Below the pieces are notes generated by a model. The model saw nothing but the letters and a program-made list of their open reading frames with translations. It searched no databases and had not been told where the DNA came from. A stretch of DNA of 64,000 nucleotides from Pecten maximus (lineage: Eukaryota). The stretch is from positions 41,478,001 through 41,542,000 of the forward strand of contig NC_047018.1 of assembly GCF_902652985.1 (NCBI RefSeq), in the 5' to 3' direction. Of the stretch, positions 31,500-64,000 are shown one piece after another; the first letter of the stretch is position 1, and each line of letters begins with the position of its first letter. A program made the translations under genes and the position numbers.

Positions 31500-32399
31500 G
31501 GTGTGATTCCTGAAACAGAACAATAAATTAAAGTACAAGAATACTAGAAGCATGGTGCATCATTGTGTAGGAACGACAATATGTCGGTTGGCAGGGCTAT
31601 TTGATTTTGTTGTATTTAATGCACAATAGACGACAAGGACAAAATAAAAACTGAAACTCGTTACGGAAAAAGTTCAGAAACAAGATGAAACCAAATTAAA
31701 AGTATACATCATGAAAGAGATGTCCTAACTATTGAAAATCGGAAATGGGGATAATAATTCACAGAACTAAAGAATATCTGGTGGTGCACATGGGGTCAGG
31801 GTAGACATATATCTCTAGTCTGTAGGTGTTAACATTGGCAGCATATGTTGTTGTTTCCGATCAATATTCATCAGAACACCGCCACGACACGCTGTAAGAG
31901 GGGAATACATGCCGACTCTATCAACTGATAAATAACACAATGTTGCTGTCCTCTCGCTGTTTGTAGTTATCTCTTGATGTTTGGTTTTGGAGACTTGTAA
32001 TTCTTTGTCAAAAATTAGTGATTTTTTTTCCTTTTTAAATAGGTTCAGAAACAAGATGACAACACATTAAAGTTACTTGTAGACATCATAAACAGATGTC
32101 ATAACTTTTGGAAATCAGAAATTGGGATAATTAATCATAGAAATAAAGAATATCTGGGTAGCACAGAGGATCAGTTTAGACATGGATTTATATTACAAGA
32201 AAAAGTGCATATAGTCCATATAGTAGCCGACACCAAATGTAAGCTTCTTTATGCTGATTTTTTAAAACGCGTTTAAATACTTGTTAAAACACTACATTAA
32301 AAATGTTACATAAAACACACTTCCGGTTGCGTATTACTATTTCAGAGGACACATAACGGATAAAACGACATAGACAAGGACAATGACCATAAGATCTAT

Positions 32400-32935
32400 T
32401 AGATCTGGAGAAAATGAAGCAATCTTGGGACAATGAAGCAATCTTGGGACAATGAACCAATCTTGGGACAATGAACCAATCTGGAGACAATGAACCAATC
32501 TGGAGACAATGATCCAATCTGGGGACAATGATCCAATCTTGGGACAATGAACCAATCTTGGGACAATGAACCAATCTGGAGACAATGAACCAATCTGGAG
32601 ACAATGATCCAATCTGGGGACAATGATCCAATCTTGGGACAATGAACCAATCTGGGGACAATGAACCAATCTTGGACAATGAACCAATCTTGGGACAATG
32701 AACCAATCTGGAGACAATGAACCAATCTGGGGACAATGAACCAATCTGGGGACAATGCTCCAATCTGGGGATAATGAACCAATCTTGGGACAATGAACCA
32801 ATCTGGGGACAATGCTCCAATCTGGAGACAATAATCCAATCTGGGGGCAATGAACCAATCTGGAGACAATGATCCAATCTGGGGACAATGAACCAATCTT
32901 GGGACAATGAACCAAACTTGGGACAATGAACCAAA
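32400..32935. repeat. 19-bp minisatellite (GGGACAATGAACCAATCTT), about 28 copies
   Basis: Visible 19-bp periodicity; gives 19-aa repeating ORFs in three minus-strand frames. Confidence 0.95.
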
Positions 32936-39688: not shown

Positions 39689-40565
39689 CTTTATCAGACA
39701 CCACTTTCCTCCTATGTTTACCTGTAATTAATTAGCATAGGTATATCACGTCCCAAGTATATGTTGACCGAATGGACTGTCGTGGTATGTGCCGGGTATA
39801 TGAACCACACGTGGTACACCGCGGCTCTCAACGCTAGTGTTGCTTCAACATGACTCGGCGTGTGTCGTTAAGGTGAAAGTAGGTCAATGCCAACTCGTAA
39901 TTATAAATGCAAATATATATATATATATATATATCTGAATGTGTTTCACTCCTCACCCTATAACTCAATTTATATATAGATCACACACACACACATGTGT
40001 ATTTATGTTCCAACACGTTGAAGAATACATACACATGTACGTTGTACATCGGCGCGGTATAACACACATGAAACTCTCACCCACGTGTTCGTCAGATCCG
40101 TACGGACCTTTACATATCGCTGTCTGCTAGACCTGTACTTTAAATGATCAACTCGAGTGAAAATAAGGACAAGATTTGATAGAGGTAAATACAGGTATAG
40201 TGACTTACTAGCTGACCCCACGTGATCGGGGTCTTTCTCTCCTCTAGCTGACGTATGTACGTGGTACCAGTGCTGGAGGTTGATACAGTGATGCGCCGCG
40301 TGGGTGTTGACATAAATTGGGTGTAACCAACACCTGACAGGCGGCTCGAATAACTAGCGTTGATATGAGGTCAAACAATATCACGCCACTTGATACCATA
40401 CACATACAATTTCTATAATACAAAACTGCACCTTAAATCACCTGATCACGTGACTGGACTTACCCCAGTGACAGGAAATCTTCAAAAACAGATATCGTTC
40501 TTTAAAATAAAAATATCTTACACACTACACCACAATACAATTACATCTACCAGAATGATTGGACA
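39689..40565 (-). promoter_or_regulatory. Candidate elongase promoter and non-coding first exon with SREBP-type and NF-Y motifs
   Basis: Minus-strand donor AAG|GTAAGC at 39688; ATCACGCCAC 40380-40389, ATCACGTGAC 40445-40454, CCACGTGAT 40218-40226, ATTGG 40558-40562; locally CpG-richer. Confidence 0.35.
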
Positions 40566-41049
40566 ACAAGCTATACGCTTATATTGATTCGATCTATTTC
40601 CTTCCTACTCTGGAAAGTGTTATCTCGTATGGCACACATGCTTAATATGATTGCCTATTCCGGAGGATCCATGTGATTAACTTTGCTCTTTTCATTTATT
40701 ATTAATATGTCCTGTTGTTTTTACATCCCTAACTTCCCTTGTTTGTAAATCACTGTAAATCCGGCATAATTGCTAATTTCAATTTCTTAAATATGTTTGG
40801 TATGACCAAGTCACCCAGCAGAGAAATGATGGAACTTGTGCACAGGAACTTGGCACGGATTTCAAACTCACGGTCCATATAATGATATACAGCGTATACA
40901 ATTTGTATATATGTATTACACGAATTCCCAACTCAAGATCCATATATGCATGTTTTGTAGATATATTTAAGCATTAGCGCGCTTCATGTTGAATTTGCAT
41001 CTGTCCAGTTGGCATTCATATTGACTAGTTGGCAGTTCATAAGCTGGTG

Positions 41050-41274
41050 GTTTGGTTTGGTTTGTTTTTGTTTAACGTCCTATTAACAGCCAGGGTCATT
41101 TAAGGACGTGCCAGGTTTTGGAGGTGGAGGAAAGCCGGAGTACCCGGAGAAAAACCACCGGCCTACGGTCAGTACCTGGCAACTGTCCCACGTAGGTTTC
41201 GAACTCGCAACCCAGAGGTGGAGGGCTAGTGTTAAAGTGTCGGGACACCTTAACCACTCGGCCACCGCGGCCCC
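41050..41274 (-). mobile_element. Full-length tRNA-derived SINE with V-domain-like core and 11-bp target site duplication
   Basis: Minus strand starts GGGGCCGCGGTGGCCGAGTGGTTAAG (A box), GAGTTCGAAACC (B box), core GGTTTTTCTCCGGGTACTCCGGCTTTCCTCC, (AAACC)n tail; TSD ATAAGCTGGTG at 41039-41049 and 41275-41285. Confidence 0.88.
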
Positions 41275-44120: not shown

Positions 44121-44564
44121 TTTAAAAAATCGTCATTGATTATGCACAGCCCATAAAATGAACCTCTTTGTGACGAATATCATGACGTCAAAGATAAGGA
44201 ATCAAGATGTCGCAGCTTTCGATTCAATAAAAAACCACACACACACATTCTCCCCAGAGACATGTCATTAACATTTTTTTATGGAATTCGTTTATAACAT
44301 AACGTGCCCGTTCTGTCATGTCATACGGCCATGTCATAAATATCACAAGACACGTGTAATAACAGTATTGTGACGTCATAATAAACATGTTACGTCGCAT
44401 GATTGTTTGGGTAGACGGAAACGTCCCATCCGAAATGTATTAAACTTGTTCAATAATTTGAACATATCAAATTGGTGAACTCGTTTAATAAATTCCATTT
44501 GAATTACCTCGTATCCTCTATATCCAAAACATGAGCTTGATGAATTTTGGCAATATATATTTAA

Positions 44565-44917
44565 AGGAGCATTCCTTCGTTTAAATTAAGTTTAGTTTGT
44601 CAAAATTAAACTTTTTGGAAAATATGATTTTTTCCAAATAGCAAAAGTTATAATCTTAACATTAATAAGGCAGTTTTACTCTCAAGATAAACCAAAGTTC
44701 TTCAAGTATAAAGTCCTGAAAATTCTTAATTCGACCCGAAGTATCACTAATTATCGCAAAGACATAGGGTACTTGGATACGATAAGCCTTTTTCCTGTAC
44801 ATTTCGGCGTTAATTTCATTACCTGTAGGCACAAACACTCATATAATCATCGTTCGGACATAGATTTCATCAATAGAAATTGTGCATGTTTCTGACGTCC
44901 GAACGAAGAATGCCCCT
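44565..44917. mobile_element. Non-autonomous TTAA-flanked DNA element (Kolobok-like); second copy at 47199-47552
   Basis: TTAA|AGGAGCATTCCTTCGTT ... AACGAAG(G)AATGCCCCT|TTAA. Confidence 0.7.
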
Positions 44918-45475
44918 TTAACTCCCCCTCGTTAAACTATCATGTGACCTCATTCAATATCCTCTACATCACACGTCTGTATTCGCTATGCACTGTTTAC
45001 TTCGGACAGTGCGGCTCCATCTTCATCACCAAAGTCTCTTCTATGACTTCTACCAACAAATACCACATACACATATCTATATATGTTAAACTTTCTTTCT
45101 CTTAGATCTGCATGTGCATTTCAAAGTACCAGAACGAATGTGCTTTCCAACAGTTAGTGCAACGTTCTAGAACAAAAAAAAAATCCCATAACGTGCTAAT
45201 TTTATTGAAGGAAGACATTTTGGTAAAATGACAACGTCCCATCATTATTTTTTTCTTCGATTAAAATTACTCTTTGTCGGCGATGTAATATCTATGCTAA
45301 GCAGCGTTCGTTAAAATGACCCATGTCGTACACAAGAAATGAATTAAAATGCATGTACATGTACAAAGACGTCATAGAACTGTTTCAATAATTGACACGT
45401 TTTATTTAAAGATACAAAGCTACATAAACCCGTTGGCTGGGTAACGACGTATTTATCGAATTCATGACGTCACGT

Positions 45476-46850
45476 CTACGAATCGACGTGGATTAGATGA
45501 CCGGCAAATGTACTATACCCAGCAGGCAATACTGCAGTGTCTGCGCTACCAAAATGGCGAACCCAGACATGCTGACCCTCTGCACACCCTACGATGGCTA
45601 CCTGTGTGCCCTGGTCATAACCGTAAATGGTCGAATGGAGTCTAGCTACCCTTGATCCTTCCTGGACAATCTCCGCGTCCAGGTTCTTGTTGTCACCATC
45701 GGAAACAATAGTTGCAGCAAATTCGTACAACCCGCTGTTGGAAAGACATTTAAGTATTAATCGATCAGTCACTCAAAAGGGAAATATACTGGTATTCGGA
45801 TTTGATGTTAAACGGAAATAAATACATACATATTCCAAGTTATCTTCATGTTAACTTAACTCGATTACATTCACGACTCTAGATCACATGGTTATAGAAT
45901 GATATAAATCATCTGGATGGTTATAAATCCAGGAAAAGATATTAGAAACAAAAAGAGTTTTTTTTTTTATTGTTAAAATCCTTCGTTATCTCAATTAGAT
46001 ATTAATAAACAAAAAATGACGATGGCGGTCGGTCGGTCATACACCTGAGAACTTGAAATAAAGGTCTCGGAATGTAACTGATAGGGACAGCTAACAACTA
46101 AGCCGCATGATAAGCGTTGTGATTTCGGTTTTTCTATTGTTAACTTTCCATTTCTAGGCTGTAACATCCGTGCTTCCCGAAACATGTCTCAGTTGATAAA
46201 CAAGGAACTGTTCCCAATATCACGATTACCATTGACACTTAGGTTGATGAAGACCATTTTGCTCATTGAAAACTATGATTTCCTTTGCGATATTAAGTTA
46301 GATGTGTTCATTTCTAGTGTATATGTCTGCTGGTTGTGCTGTCATCATTTCGGCCTTCGTATTTTCGAAGGTAAACATTATAGGAAAAGTATAGTCTGTT
46401 TCATAATCGTCTAAGATTAAAAATTATAGAAAAAATATAGTCTGTTTCTTAATCATTAAAGGCAAAAAAAAGCAAAAAAAAAAGAAAGGCAAAAAAAAAA
46501 CAAAAAACAAAAAACACAAACAAACAAACATTTGTCCGTTTCTTAATTAACACAATACAATAATCCGTTTTGGTAAGCCCGCGAAATTCTAACCATGAAC
46601 AAAGAGGGAATGGACAGTATCCATACAGACAAAGTTGTACTCCATTAAATGTATACTTTACAAAATGAAACATGAGTAGTAACTAATCCTGTTTACTTAC
46701 CTGTAGGGACACATAAACATGCCTGTGGTGGGATCGTACGCTTGTCCAACATTGGTCAGTACCTGGTCAAATACGATGGCCTGGCGGTCGTTGAGGTGAC
46801 CAACATTTTGGTTAAGCCTCGCGGTGAATCCAATTTTTTGGTCAGAGGCC
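45476..46850 (-). pseudogene. Partial duplicate of C1q-domain gene A: 5'-truncated exon 3 (46850-46701) and complete exon 4 (45734-45476)
   Basis: Peptide identical to gene A exons 3-4, but the native acceptor, first codons, and signal and coiled-coil exons are absent. Confidence 0.75.
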
Positions 46851-48098
46851 TTCGATTCAATAAAAAAACCACACACACACAATCTCCCCAGAGACATGTC
46901 ATTAACATTTTTTTATGGAATTCGTTTATAACATAACGTGCCCGTTCTGTCATGTCATACGGCCATGTCATAAATATCACAAGACACGTGTAATAACAGT
47001 ATTGTGACGTCATAATAAACATGTTACGTCGCATGATTGTTTGGGTAGACGGAAACGTCCCATCCGAAATGTATTAAACTTGTTCAATAATTTGAACATA
47101 TCAAATTGGTGAACTCGTTTAATAAATTCCATTTGAATTACCTCGCATCCTCTATATCCAAAACATGAGCTTGATGAATTTTGGCAATATATATTTAAAG
47201 GAGCATTCCTTCGTTTAAATTAAGTTTAGTTCGTCAAAATTAAACTTTTTGGAAAATATAATTTTTTCCAAATAGCAAAAGTTATAATCTTAACATTAAT
47301 AAGGCAGTTTTACTCTCAAGATAAACCAAAGTTCTTCAAGCATTAAGTCCTGAAAATTCTTAATTCGACCCGAAGTATCACTAATTATCGCAAAGACATA
47401 GGGTACTTGAATACGATAATCCGTCTTCGTGTACATTTCGGCGTTAATTTCATTACCTGTAGGCACAAACACTCATATAATCATCGTTCGGACATAGATT
47501 TCATCAATAGAAATTGTGCATGTTTCTGACGTCCGAACGAAGGAATGCCCCTTTAACTGCCCATCTGTGACCTCATTCAATATCCTCTACATCACACTTC
47601 TGTATTCGCTATGCACTGTTTACTTCGAACAGTGCGGTTCCATCTCCATCACCAAAGTCTCTCCTATGACCTCTACCAACAAATACCACATACACATATC
47701 TATATATGTTAAACTTTCTTTCTCTTAGATCTGCATGTGCATTTCAAAGTACCAAGACGAATGTGCTTTCCAACAGTTAGTGCAACGTTCTAGAAGAAAA
47801 AAAAATCCCATAACGTGCTAATTTTATTGAAGGAAGACATTTTGGTAAAAATGACAACGTCCCATCATTATTTTTTTCTTCGATTAAAATTACTCTTTGT
47901 CGGCGATGTAATATCTATGCTAAGCAGCGTTCGTTAAAATGACCCATGTCGTACACAAGAAATGAATTAAAATGCATGTACATGTACAAAGACGTCATAG
48001 AACTGTTTCAATAATTGACACGTTTTATTTAAAGATACAAAGCTACATAAACCCGTTGGCTGGGTAACGACGTATTCATCGAATTCATGACGTCACGT

Positions 48099-51000
48099 CT
48101 ACGAATCGACGTGGATTAGATGACCGGCAAATGTACTATACCCAGCAGGCAATACTGCAGTGTCTGCGCTACCAAAATGGCGAACCCAGACATGCTGACC
48201 CTCTGCACACCCTACGATGGCTACCTGTGTGCCCTGGTCATAACCGTAAATGGTCGAATGGAGTCTAGCTACCCTTGATCCTTCCTGGACAATCTCCGCG
48301 TCCAGATTCTTGTTGTCACCATCGGAAACAATAGTTGCAGCAAATTCGTACAGCCCGCTGTTAGAAAGACATTTAAGTATTAATGGAACAGTCACTCAAA
48401 AGGGAAATATACTTGTATTCGGATTTGATGTTAAACGGAAATAAATACATACATATTCCAAGTGACCTTCATGTTAACTTAACTCGATTACATTCACGAC
48501 TCTAGATCACATGGTTATAGAATGATATAAATCATCTGGATGGTTATAAATCCAGGAAAAGATATTAGAAACAATTTTTTTTTAAATTGTTGAAATCCTT
48601 CATTATCACCATTCGATATTAATAAACAAAAATGACGATGGCGGTCGGTCATGCACTGGAGAACTTGACATAACGGACTCGGAATGAAACTGATAGGGAC
48701 AGCTTACAACTAGGCCGCATGATAAGCGTTGTGGTTTCAGTTTTCCTATTGTTAAGTTTCCATTTATAGGCTGTAACATCCTAGCTTCCCCAAACATGTC
48801 TCAGTTGATAAACAAGGAACTGTTCCCAATATCACAATTACCCTTGACATTGAGGTTGATGAAGACCATTATACTCATTGAAAACTATGATTTCCTTTGC
48901 GATATTAAGTTAGATGTGTTCATTTCTAGTGTATATGTCTGCTGGTTTTGCTGTCACCATTTCGGCCCTCGTATTGCTGAAGGTAAAAAGTATAGGAAAA
49001 GTATAGTCTGTTTCATAATCGTCGAAGATTGAAAATAATAGAACAAAATATAGTCTGTTTCATAACCATCGATGGCAAAAAAAAGCAAACAAAAAAGAAA
49101 GGCAAAAAAAAAACAAAAAACAAAAAACACAAACAAACAAACATTTGTCCGTTTCTTAATTAACACAATACAATAATCCGTTTTGGTAAGCCCGCGAAAT
49201 TCTAACCATGAACAAAGAGGGAATGGACAGTATCCATGCAGTTTTACTTCATTAAATGTATACTTTACAAAATGAAAAGTAGTAACTAATCCTGTTTACT
49301 TACCTGTAGGGACACATAAACATGCCTGTGGTGGGATCGTACGCTTGTCCAACATTGGTCAGTACCTGGTCAAATACGATGGCCTGGCGGTCGTTGAGGT
49401 GACCAACATTTTGGTTAAGCCTCGCGGTGAATCCAATTTTTTGGTCAGAGGCCTGGCGTCTGGCTGAAAATTAAAGGAAATTACGAGAAACTAACTAGCA
49501 CATCTCGCGAGTGATACTGTACCATTAACTTTATATGTTTTTATGAGTTGGTTTAGATAGGCTGGAAGAGTGCATTTACTTGTCATAGAGAATAAATATC
49601 TTTAATCTTAATACAACCAGACTTGTCAAGTATCTGAAGAACTTAACGCGGTACCCGTATAGTGGGAAATTTAAAAACATTTTCAATGAAACAAATTAAA
49701 GAATATTCCCTTATTTCAATCTCATTCGCACGAAATAGTTCTAAAACTACGTTTTGATAAAACAAGTAAAAAAGTATTATTTATGTAAAGTGTTCCAAGA
49801 CATTGTACTGGTTCAACAAAAATTAATACCGAGATGATAATCACGAGTAACAAATTAGCATACTTCGGGATGTTTCCCTGCAAAAATGTACAGGAAAAAG
49901 GTTAAATACATATAAAGGGAGACAACTGCGATTTACTTAAGAGTACGCAATCAATGATGATGATTACGCCCAAAAGCATATAGCACTGTCGTATGTATAT
50001 ATTTGTTATTTATGTTTGTGTGGCGTTTTTGTTGTCTCTCACGCGCAAACGTACTTATGTATTTAACCGGTTAAGTGAGAGTTCATGGATGGACGCACAG
50101 TTAACGTTCTCGAGCTATTACTGACGGATAGTTTTCTCTATTTACACTGCGTTAACAATATGTGAGCCATTCTTCAGACACAGTAACGGACTGCGGTAAG
50201 TCTATCTTTATATAACTGTGTCTGTCTTACTGTTACCTTGGTCCATTTCTTAGTAAACTTGGGTAAATACTCGTAAGAACGTGCGCCTCAAAGATGCGTA
50301 GTATAGGTACTATTATCTAGTATGCTAATTAGTGAAGCTATTTTCAAATATTGGCTTATTTGCTAAGAATATCCTGATTGGCGCTATATGAATGTATTTT
50401 TACAGTTATTATCACTTATACTTATGTCATAACTATAAAGAGCACTCAGGCGAGATGGTATGCATTTTGAAAAGTATGGAAGCCGTGAGTGGACATATAC
50501 TGTTTCGTTTATCGTTTGCAAGATAATTATCAGGATGTTCTGAGGCCGCACGAAGTCGTTGGTAATGGTACAATGTGTTTTGGTTATATTCAATAGTAAT
50601 TTAGCTAATAGATAATTATCCAGTTTTATGTATTAAATGAAAGTGATGTGCAGATTTGTCTGGGAAAGAACAGGGAACACACAATCGAACCCGGGTCTCC
50701 GGCGTGATAAGCCTCGGCTCTACCTCTTAAGCCAAAGAGTGACAGACCTATTTAACACTATTTTTTAACACTATGTACAAGCCACACCGATCCGTTCCTT
50801 GTACACTTGTATGGAAGTATTTGACAACTTTCGTTATTGTTCTTTAAGTTCCATGTGACGGCCACACCATCCATCAAAAGTCAACCAAGACCCTGGTCAG
50901 TGTGTAAGGAGTGCCAGCTCTAGGACAATCAGACAGGAAGGGAAACCAATACACAGCTTACAGAGCGCCAGGACAGGTCAAGAGGTGGACATTGAAGGTA

Positions 51001-52612
51001 ACATGCATGGATTGCGTCTTTAAGACGAAAGTATTGTCGTGATTGTTATGATCTGTAGACAACAACAGCTGTATACTCTATAATGATTTGACATGATTTA
51101 CTACTGAACTATCCTATGTGGATAACCGACTGCGGTTTGGAAATCACGACACGTAGACCAGCGTAGTCTACAGTTACGCAGCAAGTTTGATTATGTGAGG
51201 GGTTTATACAGCGACAACTTACTTTTGGGCAGAGCCTTATTTAACTTTGTGTGAATCTGGGTAGAAGTGAGAGTAAATTATTAATTTGAAACAAAATGTT
51301 GTTTCTCATATAACTACATCTGTCCCTTCTTTAGATTAGTAAAGTTAGTGACTGCATTCATACCACCGTAAACGCAGTGAAAAAAGGCTCATCGGATTAA
51401 TAAGCGCGGGAATCGGTAACATAATCATGACGTCGTCTCTTTGTGACGTTACAAAACGTCAATTAGACGGCGCCATTTTGAAAGGACTGATGAACGCAAT
51501 TTTAGCGTTTTCTCCTGTTACCCGATGGTCCCTGTACAAAGAGCAAACCTCAAGTAAATATTTTGCCAAAAACCAAACTGGATATTGCGGAAATTGGTGC
51601 ACATTTAACTTCTCCACGAGGTTGGCTAACAACAAATGGCTGAAGCGTACAGCTCCTATAAAACATTCGACCACGTCACTAACTACTAAATCTGTGTCAA
51701 TCCGAGACGGAAATTGTGGATTTTGAATATATCAACTATTGAAATCGCAAAAGGCATTAAACAAGCATGTTGAGGTATTTCTTTTAATTTTGTTAACAAT
51801 ACTGGTATCTTTACGTAGATTCATTAAAAACAAATTATCTTAGCAACCACACCTATCGTACTTACCAACATCGCAGCCCATCCCAACAGTTACTTTCTTC
51901 CTACGGTATTTCAACGATTTTTCTGTATATTAGTTCATTAACCGGTAATGATATTATAATGATGTATACCAGTATACCGATATACATGTTTAACAAAATT
52001 GACATCATAAATATCTATACATATACCGAATGTGAGATTAAAAGTTATATGCATGCTGACGATATCGGAAAATGATGAATATGATAATAGATAAAGCTTG
52101 ACTCACTAATGGTGTCTTTAAGTTCTCGAACTGACATTTCCTTGGTTCGGAGTTGGGCAGTCAACGATTGAATTTCACGTGCCTGTTGCCCAACAAAAGC
52201 TTCAGCTTGTCGCCATTCATTTTCAAGATTGCCTAGAAAAAAATACACGTATTGTAACAAAAGTCAAACTTATGCTTTCATGTATTCGAACTGCATTGTT
52301 GCAAAAAAAAAAAAAAAGAAAGAAAGAAAGAAAGAAAAAGCCAAATAAATAATGTTAAAAGTAGTTTAGATATATTAGTAATGGAACTGTCGCATCTCTC
52401 CTTTCCGAATTTTGACATTTATTTGAAGTTACATATCGACAAAATATCTTTAAAAATATGAAACAAACTACTGTTATCAACTAAAAAACATTAATTAGAA
52501 TATACTAGTGCTTTATGAAAAAACACGTACCTAGGCGCTGAGACAAGTCTAATTGACTGCAACTGACTGTGGACAGAATTGTCACAACTCCGAACGCGAT
52601 TGAAGCCTGCAT
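48099..52612 (-). CDS. Secreted C1q-domain-containing protein A (~208 aa; signal peptide, coiled coil, gC1q). Exons 52612-52531, 52232-52107, 49463-49304, 48357-48099
   Basis: MQASIAFGVVTILSTVSCSQ signal; heptad-like LENEWRQAE..IQSLTAQLRTKE; gC1q motifs IGFTA, IVFDQVLTNVGQAYDPTTGMFMCPYSGLYEF, GQHVWV, STFAGHLI; phases 1,1,2 consistent; AATAAA on the minus strand near 48025. Confidence 0.9.
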
Positions 52613-52766
52613 GATGATACCTGTTCGAGTAGCGTTGTGGGTCAGTCTAGTGATCAGATGATAAGTAAACGGAGCACGTGCTCTGTCCACTGATAAGAGA
52701 CGCATAACAATCTGGTGTTATTCCTGTCTCGTTGTCTTTACCACACCTGAACTGTCCACCAGAAGA
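52613..52766. promoter_or_regulatory. Putative compact bidirectional promoter / 5'UTRs between C1qDC A and B
   Basis: 154 bp between divergent ATGs; palindrome GAGCACGTGCTC 52672-52683 flanked by TGATAAG at 52659 and 52691. Confidence 0.65.
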
Positions 52767-55150
52767 ATGAAGTTGTTTCTTTGCGTCATCGTTCTTGCAC
52801 TGAGTGCTGTGGGCCACTGCCAGTCTTTCGAAAGCAGGGTAGGTAAGTTCTTCGACTTTATACATTTTATTGAAATTAAGTAGCCTTTTAATAGTATGAA
52901 TTCTAAATTAGAATAAATTATTCATTCTCAAAAGAACATATCATTCGTAGATGAAAAGTTCAGAATAAGCGGAAATGACCAAGGTCAAATTGATAGCCTG
53001 CCGGTTAAGCAAGACTATCAAATACATGAATGAAATTCACTCTGGTGCCTAGTACATGTATCGATTGATATAAATACCCATGTCCCTTTCTGAACGCGTT
53101 ATTCTCTTTGTAGATGGAAGTTTTTCAAATTTAGTGTTTATATAGGTTTTCTCCATAGAACTGTAAGTACATAATGTTAACTTCCCAAAAATCTCACAAA
53201 TGTGAGGATAAAAAATGAATACGCATTATAAAATGTCTCTTAAACATGAAAACCTTGACCAATTTATATTTCTATTGCACGTTCTCGGATTTGCATCTTC
53301 TGTTATTTTCCAGTCACCTGAAAATTTCATCCTCAACCTTCATAAATTGGCCAACTATTCTTTAACATATATATTCTGTTGTTGATTATCAATAAGTCAT
53401 TTTTCTTTAGATGCACTGGAGCGGATGCTCTTGAAGGTTAAAACAAAAACCGGACACCAGAGCAACGTCATAGCAAATCTTAAAAAACAGCTCGAGACAG
53501 TCGCACGCTCGGAGGATACCCTAAAGAATGCCTTAACAGGTAAGATTTTTTTTTCATCACTTTTACTCACAAGAATAACATTGAATATAATTTATAAAAC
53601 CTGTCAGCCACATCAAAAACAAGTGAATCAGTTTTATAAGATTTCTACTTTTATGTAATTCGGTAATTATGCTTGCAATATCCGGAACTTCAACGACATT
53701 TTTGTCATGAAAAAATATTTTGGTGAGAAGAGAGGTAGAAAGTTTTATTTACAATTGTTGTATTAGAATGCATGTATAATGAACTATATAATGATATTCA
53801 ATGTGATTTGTCGTTTTCTTTTCTCTCAAGGGAACATATTTCAAGTGAAAATCAAAACCTAATGCAACAATGCTGTCATGCTATTTATATTCTCTCAAAA
53901 TCAAACCAAAGAACAAATGTTGTATAAATTCAGTTCTGAGACATTCCAAACAACTACCGGGCCTCTTATCGTAGCATTTGTCCCTAACACCATCACAGCG
54001 TCCTCAATACTCCAGGAGTTACGAAGAAAGTACTCCTAGGGTATCGAGGATGGCATCTCTGAAGAGTCATCGAATAGAGAAACAGTTGTGTAATAAAACT
54101 TTATGCTGGATAGATCTAGTCGACATAATTTGTATATTTCATCCATTTATTTGAAGTAAATCCATGTAACTGTTCACTATTGTACAATAACAAAGCCTTT
54201 GTGACATATACATACTATAGGCTCCTTCTTGTTTTACAGTTGACAAGCGACAAGCCGCTCAACCTGTTGTTGCTTTCATGGCAACTCGACAAGCAAACCT
54301 CACTCATTTATCTCGGCACCAGACCATTGTGTTTGAGGATGCCAGTGTCAATGTACATCATGCTTACAACAACAATACCGGGGTGTTTACATGTCCCTTT
54401 ACTGGACTCTACGAGTTTGCTACTACGATCGTGTCAGCAGGGGAGCAACGTAATCTCAATTTCGAGGTAAATTTGCTTTAATGTAAATGTATAAACGTAT
54501 TCAATAATACATCTTTTTGCACAATTTTGATCAAAATACACAAATGCACAAATAATTTGACATTAGATAAAACACATTGTTGGGTGGGTGACAGCAGGCA
54601 TCAAGAAGGAATATAAATGGTATACTTGAAACATCTTTGATTTTTCCATGAGTCGAGATCAAATTCAAACGAAGAAGATATTCATCCGCTTTACAAATGA
54701 CGTCACGTTTCAGATCATTCATTGATATGGTATTGTAATTTTGATCCACATTTAATATTTAAAAATGTCCTTCCTGATATAAGGTCCAGGTAATGAACCT
54801 TTTATATTTGTTCTTCATGGAAACATTAATACATCAATATTTAAAAATGTCCTTCATGATATTAGGTCCAGATAATGAACCTATGTGATTTGTTTTTCGT
54901 GGAAACATTAATACAAAAGGGCGAATTACATGATATCTTTTAACGTAGCACATTGATTTTGTAGATGATGATAGATACTATGCGAATCGCATACGTCCAT
55001 GCCACTTTATACGAGTACGACATGGGCACACAGGTTGCCGTCGCCCACTGTAACCAAGGCCAGCACGTGTTCCTCAGACAGGACAAGGGTTCTTTCGGAC
55101 TTCCGGGCGGATTCTGTACATTCTCCGGACATCTTATTTCTATGTTATAG
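52767..55150 (+). CDS. Secreted C1q-domain-containing protein B (~205 aa). Exons 52767-52842, 53411-53539, 54240-54466, 54965-55150
   Basis: MKLFLCVIVLALSAVGHCQ signal; coiled-coil exon; gC1q motifs VAFMA, IVFEDASVNVHHAYNNNTGVFTCPFTGLYEF, GQHVFL, TFSGHLI; phases 1,1,0; AATAAA at ~55159. Confidence 0.9.
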
Positions 55151-56899
55151 TTTCTGGAAATAAAAAGAAAAGAAATCTATCCTTTGTAACCTGTTTCTTA
55201 TATTATTTCAGATTGTTTTAATGTGAATAATAAGGTAAAATTTATATATATGCCCTAGCACTATTCAGTAATTTGTGGATGTGAGAATGGTAAAGTTTTA
55301 CCCTTTGATTTAACTCTGAAAGATGCTCACCAAAATATAATAAGATGTAACGATACTATTGTGTTAACATGACTTAATCAGTTTATAGACTATTTCATAT
55401 ATATCGCCAAAGTCTTGCTTAACAAATATTGGTAGCACTACGAAATTTGCTGTTTTAAAACGGATTGAAGTGTTGCTTTTATTTTACATTACATATAAAC
55501 ATATACTTCCAAAGAAGATCATGCAACATGAAATAAAATCCTCAATAATAATATTGAGAATTGTCAGACATGCGAACTAATGTTTATAGATAAAGCGCCG
55601 TTCAAATATAAGAATTTTCGTACGAAGTATACATATGTGTGTAATTATTTTGGTACAGCTTTCCAATATCTGTATAATATTTATTCATAATTTTTTTGAA
55701 TATTGTATTTCATACTTTTGGAACATTCGATGACATATACTACCTGTAGATATTCCGGCCTTTTTTGGGCAATTCTCTTACTGACAAAATATGCCCAGTC
55801 CAATTTAATTTTGCTTTCAACAAATATCTATTTTCGGTGTGGAAGTTCTGACATTAGACTTCAAGTTTAATTACTGTTATTCCAGAGGGTTACTATTGGA
55901 TTAAGTTCTGTCACCTTAAGTGACAATATCTGTTGAAATGTTTGTTCAAAGTCTGACACACTGCCGAATGGCTTCTCTCTCTATATTTTTGTAAAAGATA
56001 CAGTATATGGCGGATAACGAATACACATTTGATACGTTTCGTATATTGAAATAATTATGGGACATTCGGGGGGAGGGGAGGGAAGAAAAACAACAACACA
56101 TTAGTTCTTAACTTCATTGAAGAGCTAAACATTCTCACCAAGTCTTAAACAAAAATAAAATGATTATCAAATTTAACAAATCTAGCTATTCGTATTGAAG
56201 TTATTGAAGACGCTATAATAGCTCTCCACCAGATTTTGTCATTTCTTTCGACATTTTTTTTTTTTTTTCTCTATTTCCTCCGTCGCCATCAAGGTATCTG
56301 CCATTGGCCCTTAGAATCACTGAAAAGACCAAGAAGGACGAAAAAGCTGCTCGGTGCACTTAAAATTCTTATTTTACTCTGCGATATCCAACTCACAATT
56401 TGTATTGATATGTACTCATATATTGTACTTTTTCTATACATTTTTTTTAGAAATGTGCAGGCAACTTGTTATCTAATTGATTTGAGTAGTTGCACGGTTA
56501 ATAATAAACATATGTACTTGACTTTTCTTTGAAATTTTACATTGAAAATTATGAATTTTATTGAATAAAGGGTTGCTGCACCTTCCCATCCGAATTTCGA
56601 CATTTCTTTTGACCTATTTAGAGTTTTCTTTTCTTTTTTTTCCCAGCTTGTATGATCACTTTAGGCCCTTAGCGCCATTGAAAAGACCTGATAGAACGAA
56701 ACAGATGTATGATGCAATTAATCTCATTTTTGACGATTCTGCATCTAACTCTCTTGATACATAAATGCTCTTATATCTTGTGTGTCGTATAAACAATTCC
56801 CTGACGTATTTGTACTAGGCACTGTGTGTCATGGGAACTCAAGACGACTACACACCTACGGAAAGGAAACACACATTGACCCTGTCTTGGTATGTTGAG

Positions 56900-57600: not shown

Positions 57601-57624
57601 ACGTATAACGTATTATTGACAAAT

Positions 57625-59342
57625 ATGGCCTACTCCGTGAAGCGTGCAGTGACCTGGACAATATTTGTTCTTTGCTACAGACAACTTGTTGCAGCTGATA
57701 CCACTGTGACTCTTATTGGTGAATACATTACATAATTATAAGTTGTGTACATGTTCTCATTTTAATTGCAAATGTCAGTTATCGTTTCATAGACTCATGA
57801 ATGAAAATTTCTGCCATTACAGAAATTTGTGTCGTCATCATATCGATACTTGTAAGATTACATTCAGTTATAGTGTACCTGTAAGTTCCAGGAGTGTAAT
57901 TGTGTAATACTAATAAACTTGTCACTTAAAGAGAGTTTATTTTTCTTTCGAGAACTTAAACCTACGAAGGAACAACTTATGTTGGGGATTTCAGTGTTTA
58001 CAGAGAAACAGTGAAGGTCTGGGTTCTGAAAGTTTAGGAACGGGAGGTTTGGTTGCTGGCATTTCTTTCCTGCTGTTAAATAAAATCCATTTTGAAACAA
58101 GAGGGTATGCAATAATCACTTTGTCTGTGCGTCCGTTTTTTGTATTGGTCGCCTAAAGCATAAACAAGATGTCTCGTGCGCCCATAAACTGATTAAGTGA
58201 TGTTAACACAATAGTATCCTTACATCAAGGTTAGGATCTGATTATAGTTTGGTGGGCATCTTTCAGACTTAAAAGCAAAGGGTAAAACTTGACCACTTTA
58301 AAAAAATACTGACATACACAACTTACTGAATAGTGCTAGGGCATATATATGCAAATAGGGAGAAATTGTTGAAGCCTAAATTATATCCAAAGGATGGAGA
58401 TTGCTTTTGCATGATTATAGAAAGTTGACCTCCGTATTATCTCGCTTTTGTCTTTCTAGCTGATCTTGAGAAACTGGCTGCTAAAGTAGAACTGTCAGTA
58501 TACACTAATACCAATCAGTTGGATAAACTACACCTTCGAGTTCGTGAGCTTCAAGATGACACGAGAGCGGACCAAGGAAAGGGTTACATAGGCGTTCCAA
58601 ATCAAGCTTATTCTTTTATATTCTTTAAAAGAAACCTTTTTGAAAGTTATATTGAATGAATTGAAATCGAAAAGATATTATTTTCATGAAAGCGATAAAA
58701 TAATTAAGTAGTCAGTAACGAAGTACAAACGCTATTGCAAATGTTAAATATTAAAGAGAATTGATGACAAGGAAGATTTTCTATCCGAGTTCAATTGAAA
58801 TTTCTGTAAGTTCATGACTTTTTGAAGCTACCCATACATACGTGTGTAATTTTGGACATTATTACCATGAGGGAAATAATTTAAACCCATTTCTATTATG
58901 TGTTCTGTTTTTTAATGTTAGTAAGACGAGCGGCTGACCCGAACATTGGCTTAGATGCTCTTGTGGTAGATGTCAATACCAATCTTGGTGATCAACAGGC
59001 AATTCTCTTCGACAACGTACAAACAAACCAGGGCTCTGGTTACAACCCTGCCAGTGGAAAATTCACCTGTCCAAAGAGTGGTTCTATCAGTTTGCATCAA
59101 CCATCCCGTCCCAATTGAACGGCACCGTCGACTGTGAAATGGTCATGGACAACGTTCAAGTTGGACGTCTCCGAGCTTATCATCCGGGGTTTGACCAGGC
59201 GACACAGGTATTGGTTCTTGAATGTAGGACCGAACAACAGGTGTGGCTCCGACATTTCCATGGAGCTAATGACACCGGTATTCTCTCCTCAACTCACAGA
59301 CAAATGGCTAGTTTTAGTGGCCATCTTATAGCTTTGATGTAA
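57625..59342 (+). pseudogene. C1q-domain gene C, frameshifted as assembled. Exons 57625-57718, 58460-58582, 58922-59342
   Basis: Close paralogue of gene D; 1-nt deletion at ~59082 (GGT-TCTATCAG versus GGGCTCTACCAG) splits gC1q across two ORFs; weak exon-2 donor GTTACA; IGF changed to IGL. Confidence 0.75.
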
Positions 59343-60288: not shown

Positions 60289-60735
60289 ATTATTTTTAAC
60301 GGTAATTCGAAAACTGTTTTAACTGTGGTTTCTATGTTTACTCTTCATCGCTTTAGCCGACATTCAATACTTTCAATATAATCTGACGAGAAGTATATGT
60401 CGCCAGTAGACTTTCCGGTTGCCTGATGAACGCAAATCGAGCGGTTATTTGCGACCTCTTCAGCATCTCGGACTAAACTCAACCAGTATAGTTTACCTAA
60501 AACACCTTCTAAAATGATCGCAAACGGATGCGCAAATGTCAAATACAAATTCATTAAAAACATAAAATAATAAGCTGAGACAATGGATATAGGTTAAACA
60601 CGGCATGGATTCTGGACAAATCCAGGTTAGCCTTGCCCAACTTTGTAGAATGAGAACAACCTCTACGGTACATATATAGAGATAAGATAACTGAATGGAT
60701 AGTGGAGTGTTCACATGTTACTAAGATTGACAAGT

Positions 60736-62947
60736 ATGGCGAACCCCACGATGCATGCAGCGGTTTGGGCAATATTTGTGCTCAGCTATGGACAACTTGA
60801 TGCAGCAGCTGACACAGAATCCCGTCTTGGTGAGTAATTGGTTCAATGTAACAAGTGTGAATATTATCTACAGCTAATTACATTTATGTATATTACAACC
60901 GAAATTGCTAGTTTCAGTTGTATTTACTTTGACAGGTTGGATGAAAAGAACAAATGATTTACCATGCCATTCCGAGAATATTTTATGTCATTATATTACC
61001 TACGATATATGAAAATGAACACATGTAACACTAACAGTACTGTATTTGACGGAAAAACATAAATTATTTGTATTCAAGTGAACTTAAGATGGATAGAGAT
61101 ACATGTATGCTGATTTCTGATAATCACATTTTAATTATTGTATGGTCTTTGAACACCTTTAAACTTGAAAATTTCTTCTCTCCGTTGGAAATTGAGAGCC
61201 ATTAATCATACTCGACATATTTCTCATCTCTTATCTACAATATGTTCGCAAGAGGCACTTGTTAGATGAACTGCCTTACCCAATAAACCATTTAAACAGG
61301 GTTGTCTACCGGAGAAACATTAACCTACGACGATATTAATTCTTCCCTATTTCCATTTACAGTCTACAATCATTTCATAAATGCTGACTAAAATATTGCC
61401 AATATTTCGTTTTTAACGTAGTAAATTGCTGACATAACGGAAAAACGTTGACATTTATTTATTGTGGAGCAGACTCTTTAAGTCTCACAGAACAATAATT
61501 AGACATGTACTTTAAAAATCATGCATTTACATTTTTTTTTATCAACTCTACAATCATTTCATAAATGCTGACTAAAATATTGCCAATATTTCGTTTTTAA
61601 CGTAGTAAATTGCTGACATAACGGAAAAACGTTGACATTTATTTATTGTGGAGTTTATCTTGTCATCATATTTTGAAGTTGTTTCTATAAAGTTCTAATT
61701 TTGCCCCTCCTATGAGTATTGATGTAGTGGTAAATATATTAAATGTCTGAAAAGAAAAATAAATATACTAACCATCACAACTGTCCCCTTATTTCCCTGC
61801 ACTTATTTATTCCTTCCGTCATGGAACTTATTTTATACTTTATTTGAAAATATTCCAAAACGCTAATGCATCTTTTGATATATGTAAGATACATGCGCAA
61901 ACTTAACATTATGTGAATAGTTGTAAACCTACATGTTATTTTATTCATCTTCTTATGAAGTAATATGGATTGAGATGGATTGTTAAAGGCTACATGAAGA
62001 CTCCGTTTTATCTTGTTGTTGTCTTTTCAGCTGATCTAGAAGAACTGGCAGCTAAAGTTGATTTGTCTGTCTTTACTAATACGGCTCATTTGGAAAAACT
62101 CAGCCATCGAGTTCATGAGCTTCAAGGTGGCACGAGAAAGGACGAAAAAAGCGGTACATAGATGTTTTAAATTATAACTTGTTTTTCTGCGATTTAAAAC
62201 GTTTTAATCATAACACAGTCTATGTTGAATTCCCACTTAATTCCACTGAATTAAAAAACAAATTGATATGTATTAAATTTTAGAGAATTGACAAAATAAT
62301 CCTGTTCTTCCGCGATTTACATACTAGACTTTAAACATGATGGTTATATATGGGTCGCATTTCTACAAGCGATCGTTTTTCAAAGGAATGTCATTATTAG
62401 ATTTTTGTGAGTAAAACTGTGTCATTTAAGATGCAATTATGGATGAGTTTAATCGAAAATAAATGTTATAAAACAATTTGCATTACTTGTCAACTTTTCA
62501 TTTATAGTAAGACAAGTGGTGGATCCCAATATTGGTTTTGACGCCGTGGTCAGCAATGTGACTATCAATCTTGGTGACCAACAGACAATTCTCTTCGACA
62601 AAATACGCACCAACCAGGGTTCTGGTTACAACGCTGCGAATGGCCGATTCACTTGCCCCCAGAATGGGCTCTACCAGTTTGCCTCGACCATCCCGTCTAA
62701 ATTGAATGGCACCGTCGACTGTGAAATGGTCATGGACAACGCTCAAGTTGGGCGTTTCCGAGCCAACCACCCAGGGTTTGATCAGGCGACACAGGTATTG
62801 GTTCTCGAATGTAGGAGCGAGCAACAGGTGTGGCTCCGACATTTCCATGGAGCTAACGACACATCTATTCTCTCCTCAACCCACAGATATATGGCCAGTT
62901 TCACTGGTCATCTTATAGCTTTCAATGTAATAAAGTTTTTGTCTTGA
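60736..62947 (+). CDS. Secreted C1q-domain-containing protein D (~218 aa). Exons 60736-60829, 62031-62153, 62508-62947
   Basis: MANPTMHAAVWAIFVLSYGQLDAA signal-like; coiled-coil exon DLEELAAKV..; single-exon gC1q with IGFDA, ILFDKIRTNQGSGYNAANGRFTCPQNGLYQF, QVWL, SFTGHLI; phases 1,1. Confidence 0.9.
61363..61653. repeat. ~107-bp exact direct duplication in intron 1 of C1qDC D
   Basis: TCTACAATCATTTCATAAATG...TTATTGTGGAG at ~61363-61469 and ~61547-61653. Confidence 0.85.
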
Positions 62948-63725: not shown

Positions 63726-63885
63726 AGAACAAAACTACACCTTCACCTTACACCTACGGCGTATTACTATCAAGTGATGACTTCCTTTAAGGAAGGTTAT
63801 AAAAATACAGACATCTGCCGTACACATGTGTACAGATAAGATAGCTGGACAGTGCAGTTTACACACGTTTCTAAGATTGACAAAT

Positions 63886-63979
63886 ATGGTAAACTCCCTG
63901 AAGCATATAGCGGTCTGGACAATATTCATTCTCAGCTATGGACACCTGGCTGCGGCAGCTGACATAGAATCCCGTCTTG
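63886..63979 (+). CDS. First (signal peptide) exon of another C1q-domain paralogue E; gene continues beyond the window
   Basis: MVNSLKHIAVWTIFILSYGHLAAAADIESRL then G|GTGAGT; same 94-nt length and high similarity to exon 1 of genes C and D. Confidence 0.85.
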
Positions 63980-64000
63980 GTGAGTAAATGATATCGTTAT

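What the first reader, a model, noticed from the sequence alone, without database searches (positions are those of the whole stretch)
52531..52842. Two divergent C1q-domain genes head-to-head with start codons 154 bp apart
Seen: the ATG of gene A (-, 52612) and of gene B (+, 52767) each begin a signal-peptide exon with a phase-1 donor. The spacer must hold both 5'UTRs and any promoter, and contains a perfect 12-bp palindrome GAGCACGTGCTC (E-box) bracketed by two TGATAAG GATA sites. A and B are clearly diverged in sequence, so this is an old arrangement and not a fresh inversion. Established: gC1q domains trimerise, and collagen IV chain pairs use similarly short bidirectional promoters to co-express heterotrimer subunits. 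Inference: a co-regulated pair that may form a heterotrimeric invertebrate C1q-like recognition or matrix protein.
Basis: partly seen in the sequence, partly recalled or inferred. Interest (0 to 1): 0.8.

Follow-up and report, generated by a model that had tools for sequence, protein, structure and literature searches.

The report
Conserved two-way promoter between scallop C1q genes
Two old sister genes for secreted C1q-type recognition proteins in the king scallop sit back to back and share a roughly 150-base control region that three scallop genera have kept almost as well as coding sequence, so they are probably switched on together, but whether their proteins join in one complex is untested.

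Summary
Gene A (- strand, ATG 52612, 208 aa) and gene B (+ strand, ATG 52767, 205 aa) are real, spliced, four-exon genes. Each encodes a signal peptide, a coiled-coil-like stalk and a gC1q domain. They are 39% identical, with 154 nt between their start codons.

RNA contigs from four studies confirm every splice site. One library carries a template-switch adaptor at 52743, which puts B's start site 24 nt before its ATG. A's start site is not mapped.

The same head-to-head pair occurs in Argopecten irradians (157 nt) and Mizuhopecten yessoensis (168 nt). The spacer is 60-68% identical between species, like the first exons, while the first introns are at shuffle level.

Both GATA sites are invariant in all three species. 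The 12-bp E-box palindrome is found only in Pecten.

A sense GATAAG box 35-90 nt before the ATG also marks the neighbouring paralogues, the closest relatives in other bivalves, and 9 of 40 other scallop C1q genes.

Best reading: an old, GATA-driven bidirectional promoter that co-expresses two paralogues. The heterotrimer idea is neither supported nor excluded.

This is a new example of a known arrangement and is of moderate interest.

The parts
52531..52612 (-). Gene A exon 1, coding part: ATG at 52612, signal peptide MQASIAFGVVTILSTVSC..., phase-1 donor
   Evidence: Sequence. Splice joint 52231/52530 (cut +1) in four runs. Translation. The in-frame ATG at 52705 is closed by stop codons in the two other species.
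52107..52232 (-). Gene A exon 2 (126 nt), coiled-coil-like stalk
   Evidence: Joints 49463/52107 and 52231/52530. Translation. Weak coiled-coil-type Pfam hits.
49304..49463 (-). Gene A exon 3 (160 nt), first third of the gC1q domain
   Evidence: Contigs in four runs with no differing letters. Pfam C1q 37.9 bits, profile positions 2-42.
48099..48357 (-). Gene A exon 4 with stop codon, rest of the gC1q domain. A twin exon at 45476-45734 encodes the same residues and may be the one actually spliced.
   Evidence: Loose ends before 49304 mapped. Pfam C1q 28.4 bits. Frame closes at 627 nt, giving 208 aa.
52613..52766 (.). 154-nt spacer between the two start codons: both 5'UTRs plus the shared promoter. 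It is a conserved non-coding element.
   Evidence: Alignment A1 of three scallop species. Identity 0.60-0.68 against 0.32-0.42 for first introns and 0.20-0.35 for shuffles.
52636..52641 (-). Invariant TGTGGG (CCCACA on A's strand), 24-29 nt before A's ATG. Proposed initiator and start site of gene A (inferred).
   Evidence: Invariant columns. Mirrors B's mapped CCACACC start block. A's start site itself is not mapped.
52659..52668 (+). GATA site 1, TGATAAGTAA. The GATAAGTAA part is invariant in the three species.
52672..52683 (.). Perfect 12-bp palindrome GAGCACGTGCTC with E-box CACGTG. Specific to Pecten.
   Evidence: unique in the window. Not conserved. Intact in the X1 contig of another sample.
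52689..52698 (+). GATA site 2, ACTGATAAGA. TGATAAGA is invariant in the three species. It lies 46-52 nt before B's start site, roughly midway between the two genes.
   Evidence: The same GATAAGA box occurs in relatives.
52703..52719 (+). Conserved block CATAACAATCTGGTGTT (CATWACAWTCTGGT), unassigned factor site 25-40 nt before B's start site
52741..52756 (+). Conserved block CCACACCTGAACTGTC with B's transcription start at A 52743. It fits the initiator consensus YYANWYY.
   Evidence: The X10 contig starts at 52743 and is preceded by the template-switch oligo tail GGTATCAACGCAGAGTACGGGGG. The X8 contig starts at 52744. Conservation.
52743..52842 (+). Gene B exon 1: 24-nt 5'UTR, ATG at 52767, signal peptide MKLFLCVIVLALSAVGHC..., phase-1 donor
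53411..53539 (+). Gene B exon 2 (129 nt), coiled-coil-like stalk
   Evidence: Joints. Splice sites and translation.
54240..54466 (+). Gene B exon 3 (227 nt), first half of the gC1q domain
   Evidence: Pfam C1q 49.4 bits.
54965..55185 (+). Gene B exon 4: rest of the gC1q domain, stop codon at 55148-55150, poly(A) added near 55185
   Evidence: Joint 54464/54963 in three runs and an A-run loose end after 55185 in X10. Translation.

Best explanation
The 154-nt spacer is an old, shared, TATA-less bidirectional promoter. It drives two paralogous genes for secreted proteins of the type 'signal peptide + coiled-coil stalk + gC1q head' (sC1q-like type II C1qDC).

Shown:
- Both genes are spliced and expressed as modelled.
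- B starts at 52743, 24 nt before its ATG.
- The head-to-head pair and its 154-168 nt spacer are kept in Pecten, Argopecten and Mizuhopecten.
- The spacer is conserved like coding sequence, while the introns are randomised.
- The invariant blocks are two same-orientation GATA sites (GATAAGTAA and TGATAAGA, 32 bp apart), a CATWACAWTCTGGT block, and a CA-rich initiator-like block about 25 nt before each ATG.

Inferred:
- A starts near 52638, which would give about 105 bp between the two start sites.
- A GATA-family factor bound at the two central sites activates transcription in both directions, so A and B are made in the same cells at the same time.
- The GATA box is the ancestral promoter element of this C1q subfamily. 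It sits in sense orientation before B, before paralogues C, D and E, and before relatives in other bivalves.
- Gene A, which reads the same sites in antisense, depends on B's promoter.
- The E-box palindrome is a later, Pecten-specific addition.
For: - Gene models and splice joints.
- B's start site from the template-switch adaptor.
- No joint from either first exon to an upstream exon in four runs.
- Orthologues P0001 (A, 76% identical) and P0010 (B, 72% identical).
- Head-to-head in M. yessoensis (L002, 168 nt) and A. irradians (L003, 157 nt). Species names.
- Alignment with both GATA sites invariant.
- Spacer identity 0.60-0.68, first exons 0.54-0.76, first introns 0.32-0.42, shuffles 0.20-0.35.
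- Sense GATAAGA 34-88 nt before the ATG in B, C, D, E, an Argopecten paralogue, Pinctada L012, L004 and L013, against 0.007 expected per 60 nt.
- GATAAG ranks first of 60 letter permutations before signal-peptide-like starts of 40 other scallop C1q genes. It hits 9 loci; the other permutations average 1.6 and reach at most 4; 1.9 are expected from motif density.
- Both mRNAs are present in all four runs laid, with k-mer depths within about two-fold.
- The runs listed are close to bimodal. Ten hold 0.13-0.22 of the words (about both mRNAs), one holds 0.07, and 13 hold almost none.
Against: - A's start site is not mapped.
- Contig depths are not expression measures, and the runs were selected for holding this stretch, so co-expression is not shown.
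- No binding data exist for any factor.
- GATA site 1 could serve A and site 2 could serve B independently.
- Antisense GATAAG is not enriched genome-wide (7 hits, against a maximum of 8 among control permutations). Orientation-independent use by A is therefore an assumption.
- One X1 contig runs through the whole spacer. It is most simply explained by low-level unspliced RNA or DNA, but it leaves other start sites possible.
Confidence: 0.65

Rival explanations
1. A and B are kept head to head because they are subunits of one hetero-oligomer (A2B or AB2 gC1q trimers on a mixed coiled-coil stalk). On this view the bidirectional promoter secures matched amounts, as in the collagen IV gene pairs. 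This adds to the promoter reading and does not replace it.
For: - 1:1 orthologues of both genes are retained together in three genera.
- The two genes share the same architecture, near-equal length (208 and 205 aa) and equal stalk exon lengths of 42-43 codons.
- Contig depths are similar in three runs.
- gC1q domains in general form homo- or heterotrimers (review PMC10672478).
Against: - There is no direct evidence.
- There is no consistent charge complementarity. Net charge and pI of stalk and head vary between orthologues and do not oppose each other.
- There is no collagen stalk as in C1q A/B/C.
- The review I read describes no invertebrate heteromeric C1qDC.
- Any two gC1q paralogues would probably be modelled as a trimer, so one structure-prediction job could not tell this reading apart from homotrimers. 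No job was sent.
Confidence: 0.2
2. Two independent minimal promoters merely abut. GATA site 1 plus the CCCACA block serve A, and GATA site 2 plus the CCACACC block serve B. The spacer is conserved because it is densely packed, not because anything is shared. Expression need not be correlated.
For: - Each ATG has its own conserved CA-rich block and one nearer GATA site.
- Unidirectional relatives work with one GATAAGA box, or tandem boxes, on one side.
Against: - Both GATA sites point in B's sense direction, and none is in sense for A.
- GATA site 2 is almost equidistant from both proposed start sites.
- The spacing has stayed within 154-168 nt in three genera, although indels are free in the introns.
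Confidence: 0.2
3. The GATAAG boxes are non-canonical TATA boxes that position the start site. On this reading they are not sites for a GATA factor.
For: GATAAG differs from TATAAG by one base, and in other C1q genes it lies 35-82 nt before the ATG. That range is where a TATA box would lie if the leader were short.
Against: For B, the only mapped start site, the box begins 51-52 nt upstream. That is well outside the usual TATA distance of about 30 nt (textbook knowledge), and the -30 position holds no TATA-like sequence.
Confidence: 0.07

Closest known systems
Collagen IV gene pairs COL4A1/COL4A2 and COL4A5/COL4A6 (head to head with a shared bidirectional promoter; PMC4936713, PMC2120565)
   Same: Two paralogous genes for secreted, trimer-forming proteins are transcribed divergently from a very short shared promoter, and the arrangement is conserved in evolution.
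   Different: The collagen IV chains are proven partners in heterotrimers; here no partnership is shown. The proteins are unrelated in stalk type (coiled coil, no Gly-X-Y). The conserved sites here are GATA boxes.
Head-to-head (bidirectional) gene pairs in general (Li et al. 2006, PMC1487180)
   Same: The start-site distance falls in the commonest class (101-200 bp). Separation is selected against, and the two genes are functionally related.
   Different: That survey covers vertebrates. The expression correlation reported there for most human pairs is not measured here.
Bivalve sC1q-like type II C1qDC genes (Gerdol et al. 2019, PMC6835236)
   Same: Signal peptide, coiled-coil tail and C-terminal gC1q domain. 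The genes are members of a tandemly expanded cluster.
   Different: That paper's text never uses 'orientation' or 'heterotrimer' and uses 'promoter' once, in another context (term search). A and B each carry an extra intron inside the gC1q domain, at different places. Most scallop C1q domains are single-exon.
Vertebrate C1q A/C/B gene cluster (from my own knowledge, not checked here)
   Same: Clustered paralogous gC1q genes whose products must be made together.
   Different: As I recall, the vertebrate genes lie in the same orientation, carry collagen stalks and form an obligate heterotrimer. None of this is shown for A and B.
GATA-driven gut and immune promoters, such as the C. elegans ELT-2 'extended TGATAA' sites and Drosophila Serpent sites (from my own knowledge)
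   Same: ACTGATAAGA in the spacer equals the extended TGATAA-type site. A GATA box close to the start site recurs across a family of secreted defence-type genes.
   Different: No scallop GATA factor has been tied to these genes. I found no paper linking GATA sites and bivalve C1qDC genes.

Membership tests
C1q domain family (Pfam PF00386) | A complete gC1q jelly-roll domain matching the family profile above the curated cut-off | tested here: met
   - A exon 3: 37.9 bits (profile 2-42). A exon 4: 28.4 bits (44-127).
- B exon 3: 49.4 bits. B exon 4: 17.5 bits alone.
- Full-length orthologues P0001 and P0010 score 81.4 and 69.7 bits over profile 1-127; the cut-off is 23.7.
sC1q-like type II C1qDC (Gerdol nomenclature, PMC6835236) | N-terminal signal peptide | tested here: met
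   Both first exons encode M + hydrophobic core + small residues before a polar stretch, and both pass my simple signal-peptide filter. No dedicated predictor was available.
sC1q-like type II C1qDC (Gerdol nomenclature, PMC6835236) | Coiled-coil region between the signal peptide and the C1q domain | tested here: inconclusive
   The second exons are 42-43 codons, rich in heptad-like L/V/I spacing and charged residues. Only weak hits to coiled-coil families were found (MAP70, ATG16, HAUS1). No COILS-type tool was run.
Collagen-stalked C1q (type I; vertebrate C1q A/B/C) | Gly-X-Y collagen repeats before the gC1q domain | tested here: not met
   No Gly-X-Y run in either translation.
Collagen-stalked C1q (type I; vertebrate C1q A/B/C) | Obligate heterotrimer of the paralogous chains | not tested
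   One complex-prediction job could not separate hetero- from homotrimers, so none was sent. The charge comparison was uninformative.
Bidirectional (head-to-head) promoter pair | Divergent genes with start sites less than 1 kb apart and no intervening gene | tested here: met
   B's start site is at 52743. A's ATG is at 52612, and no contig joins its first exon to an upstream exon. The start codons are 154 nt apart. A's exact start site is unmapped.
Bidirectional (head-to-head) promoter pair | Arrangement conserved between species | tested here: met
   The same pair, the same intron positions and a 157 or 168 nt spacer occur in A. irradians and M. yessoensis.
Bidirectional (head-to-head) promoter pair | Correlated expression of the two genes | tested here: inconclusive
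   Both mRNAs are present in four of four runs laid, and the run shares are close to bimodal. However, contigs give no levels and the runs were chosen by content.
GATA-factor-dependent promoter | Conserved WGATAR sites close to the start site | tested here: met
   Two sites are invariant in three species. The same box occurs in paralogues and in other bivalves. It is enriched before other scallop C1q genes.
GATA-factor-dependent promoter | Binding of, and dependence on, a GATA factor | not testable with these tools
   Needs EMSA or ChIP and reporter mutagenesis.

The most novel reading that the evidence does not exclude
A and B are obligate partners in a mixed gC1q trimer, which would be the first heteromeric C1qDC described in an invertebrate. 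On this reading the GATA-driven bidirectional promoter has been held in place since before the scallop radiation to keep the two chains in step. More broadly, a GATA factor would be a master switch for a large part of the expanded bivalve C1qDC repertoire.
Probability: 0.15. Interest if true: 0.65.

Novelty: new member of a known kind. Interest (0 to 1): 0.4.

Why it matters
Bivalve C1qDC genes number in the hundreds and are treated as interchangeable, fast-evolving tandem copies. How they are regulated is almost unknown.

This pair has stayed together with a 150-170 nt control region through the divergence of three scallop genera. That gives a compact, well-delimited promoter with two invariant GATA boxes. 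It can be tested directly with a reporter, EMSA or ChIP.

The recurrence of the same box before other C1q genes gives a concrete hypothesis for how part of the family is switched on together.

If A and B also assemble into one trimer, combinatorial mixing of chains would become a new source of recognition diversity in invertebrate immunity.

Tried and rejected
1. E-box palindrome as the core shared element: rejected. It is not conserved in Argopecten or Mizuhopecten.

2. N-terminal extension of A from the in-frame ATG at 52705: rejected. It is closed by stop codons in both other species.

3. X1's 2116-nt contig running from A through the spacer into B as evidence for overlapping transcripts: not accepted. 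The same run retains B's intron 3 and has low-depth intron contigs, so background unspliced RNA or DNA can bridge the gap.

4. Other divergent C1q pairs in this genome (five fetched, L007-L011): they are only 30-35% identical to A and B, and my signal-peptide-exon heuristic found no other tight pair. This is inconclusive, because the heuristic misses many true first exons.
   - My hand count of adjacent C1q matches within 15 kb is about 42 same-strand, 5-6 divergent and 2 convergent.

5. Closest relatives outside scallops (L004 of GCA_032062105.1, Pinctada imbricata L012, ENA contig L013): single-exon gC1q, and no tight divergent partner detected. This is no proof of absence.
   - P0004 lies on an 811-nt contig and P0009 is not on record.

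6. First genome-wide GATA test, requiring phase-1 donors: it failed and returned mostly repeat-derived false starts. The motif-anchored test was indecisive (21% against 20% for the antisense control). The permutation test on signal-peptide-like starts was the usable one.

7. Charge or pI complementarity of A and B: none consistent.

8. Literature: no paper on head-to-head or bidirectional C1q genes in bivalves, and none on GATA with bivalve C1qDC.

9. Complex prediction: not sent. A pass against unrelated controls would not distinguish a heterotrimer from the generic ability of gC1q domains to trimerise.

10. Joined (spliced) A and B models were built only inside the sandbox from window.fa. 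There they were used for frame checks and for local tblastn against fetched loci. They were not typed or sent to any database search. Database searches used one exon by reference and returned protein ids, so no exact look-up of the scallop's own full-length A and B proteins was made.
Full report
**What is in the sequence**

The window is G000:C4:41478001-41542000 of a 918-Mb assembly. Earlier notes of this scan call it the king scallop. The size and contig number fit the Pecten maximus reference as I remember it.

At the finding, 'cat' at 52610-52612 is the ATG of a - strand gene (A), and ATG 52767 starts a + strand gene (B). 154 nt lie between them.

**Gene models**

Logan contigs of four RNA runs from four studies were laid on 49250-55249. 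They give every splice joint.

| Gene | Exons | Protein |
|---|---|---|
| A (- strand) | 52612-52531, 52232-52107, 49463-49304, 48357-48099 | 208 aa |
| B (+ strand) | 52767-52842, 53411-53539, 54240-54466, 54965-55150 | 205 aa |

All introns are GT..AG and both frames close. B's poly(A) is added near 55185.

Each protein reads as signal peptide, then about 45 residues of coiled-coil-like stalk, then a gC1q domain. Pfam C1q matches the exon pieces and matches the full-length orthologues at 70-81 bits. This is the 'sC1q-like type II' architecture of bivalve C1qDC proteins (PMC6835236).

A and B are 38.9% identical overall and about 50% identical in the head.

**Start sites**

In run X10 a contig begins at 52743 and is preceded by GGTATCAACGCAGAGTACGGGGG. 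I recognise this, from my own knowledge, as the 3' part of a SMART template-switch oligo. A contig of X8 begins at 52744. B therefore starts at the A of CCACACC, which fits the initiator consensus, 24 nt before its ATG.

No contig joins either first exon to an upstream exon.

A's start site is not mapped. An in-frame ATG at 52705 is closed by stop codons in the two other species, so 52612 is the conserved start codon and A's start site most likely lies between 52613 and 52704. By analogy with B, I propose the invariant CCCACA block at 52641-52636.

One X1 contig runs from A through the spacer into B. That run also retains an intron and has low-depth intron contigs, so I do not read it as overlapping transcription.

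**Age of the arrangement**

A whole-library HMMER search with A's last exon (by reference) returned two orthologues:
- P0001, 206 aa, 76% identical to A.
- P0010, 205 aa, 72% identical to B.

Their genomic places show the same head-to-head pair in two more species:
- Mizuhopecten yessoensis (GCA_002113885.2, L002), 168 nt between start codons.
- Argopecten irradians (GCA_041381155.1, L003), 157 nt between start codons.

Both loci have the same intron positions as Pecten. In Argopecten an ELO gene lies beyond A, and ELO-like exons lie at 39.5-41.2 kb of the window, so the wider neighbourhood is syntenic too.

**Constraint on the spacer**

| Region | Pairwise identity per alignment column |
|---|---|
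| Spacer | 0.60-0.68 |
| First coding exons | 0.54-0.76 |
| First introns | 0.32-0.42 |
| Shuffled controls | 0.20-0.35 |

The spacer is a conserved non-coding element.

The invariant blocks are:
- the sequence around each ATG;
- TGTGGG (52636-52641);
- GATAAGTAA (GATA site 1);
- TGATAAGA (GATA site 2);
- CATWACAWTCTGGT;
- CACAYCTGAACTG, which contains B's start site.

The palindrome is not conserved. The aligned sequence is GAACACGTCTTT in Argopecten and AAACAAGCCTCC in Mizuhopecten.

**The GATA box is a family trait**

The + strand paralogues downstream carry AGATAAGATAG about 35-65 nt before their ATG. These are C at about 57.6-59.3 kb, D at 60.7-62.9 kb (equal to P0013) and E from 63.87 kb.

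The closest relatives elsewhere each have one sense GATAAGA 44-58 nt before the ATG. They are L004, Pinctada imbricata L012 and L013. The background is 1.2e-4 per strand-nt, or 0.007 per 60 nt.

For A the same site is antisense; A has no sense box of its own.

I also sampled 40 other C1q genes of this genome. Sense GATAAG lies 35-82 nt before a signal-peptide-like ORF start in 9 loci. It ranks first of the 60 permutations of its letters; the others average 1.6 and reach at most 4, and 1.9 are expected from motif density. Antisense GATAAG is not enriched.

**How it most likely works**

The spacer is a compact TATA-less bidirectional promoter, with about 105 bp between start sites if A starts near 52638. 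The two central GATA sites recruit a GATA factor that fires both initiators, so the two paralogues are made together.

The GATA box is ancestral to the subfamily. After an inverted duplication, A came to depend on B's boxes.

The distance of 51-52 nt from GATA site 2 to B's start site argues against the box acting as a TATA substitute.

Co-expression is suggested only weakly. Both mRNAs are present in all four runs laid, with similar k-mer depth. Of the listed runs, ten hold about both mRNAs' worth of words, one holds 0.07, and 13 hold almost none. The runs were chosen by content, and contigs do not measure levels.

**Heterotrimer idea**

Nothing here tests it. There is no collagen stalk. Charges of stalk and head are not complementary in a consistent way. 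The review I read lists no invertebrate heteromeric C1qDC, though gC1q domains can form homo- or heterotrimers in general (PMC10672478).

I did not send the one complex-prediction job. Success against unrelated controls would be expected for any two gC1q domains.

**Comparison with known systems**

Head-to-head pairs with 101-200 bp between start sites are the commonest class in mammals. They tend to be conserved, correlated in expression and functionally related (PMC1487180). The collagen IV pairs are the classic case of partner chains on a bidirectional promoter (PMC2120565, PMC4936713).

I found no paper on such an arrangement, or on GATA sites, for bivalve C1qDC genes. I file this as a new member of a known kind.

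**Method note**

Joined exon models were built only in the sandbox from window.fa. They were never typed or sent to a database search. Database searches used a single exon by reference or returned protein ids.

Noticed in passing
window 44229-49454: Young tandem duplication of a 2.6-kb unit (92-100% identical) holding gene A's last two exons. The downstream copy's exon 3 (46701-46851) lacks the first 9 nt and the acceptor. Its exon 4 (45476-45734) encodes the same residues. In all four RNA runs, the 30 letters read across the exon 3/4 joint carry the base of the 45.7-kb copy (A where 48353 has G), so the twin exon may be the one spliced, or the site is polymorphic. The Argopecten locus has no such duplicate.
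   Followed up: partly
window 48358-49303 and 54467-54964: A and B each have an intron inside the gC1q domain, at different places: A after residue 122 in phase 2, B after residue 144 in phase 0. Both positions are kept in Argopecten and Mizuhopecten. Paralogue D, the relatives in other bivalves, and most of the 150 or more C1q matches in this genome have a single-exon domain. This points to two independent intron gains before the scallop radiation.
   Followed up: partly
window 57616-59342: Paralogue C (exons near 57616-57714, 58456-58575, 58921-59342) has its C1q exon split over two reading frames that overlap by about 20 residues. This looks like a frameshift, so it may be a pseudogene.
   Followed up: no
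window 51250-51850: A stretch inside A's intron 2 is covered by several RNA contigs with many loose ends running into unrelated sequence. It probably belongs to a transcribed repeat family, not to gene A.
   Followed up: no
window 60715-62947 and 63871-63984; G000:C4:41544224-41548502: The + strand C1q cluster continues with D (225 aa, equal to P0013, three exons), the first exon of E at the window's end, and two further C1q exons just beyond the window. C, D and E share an alignable promoter with a tandem AGATAAGATAG box.
   Followed up: partly
window 39555-41177: Exon-like matches to the ELO (fatty-acid elongase) gene that flanks the A orthologue in Argopecten.
   Followed up: partly
window 3365-4911, 27011-27532, 32284-32934: Long open frames made of short tandem peptide repeats (for example HYTSLTSLSV units). 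They are most likely minisatellites and not genes.
   Followed up: no
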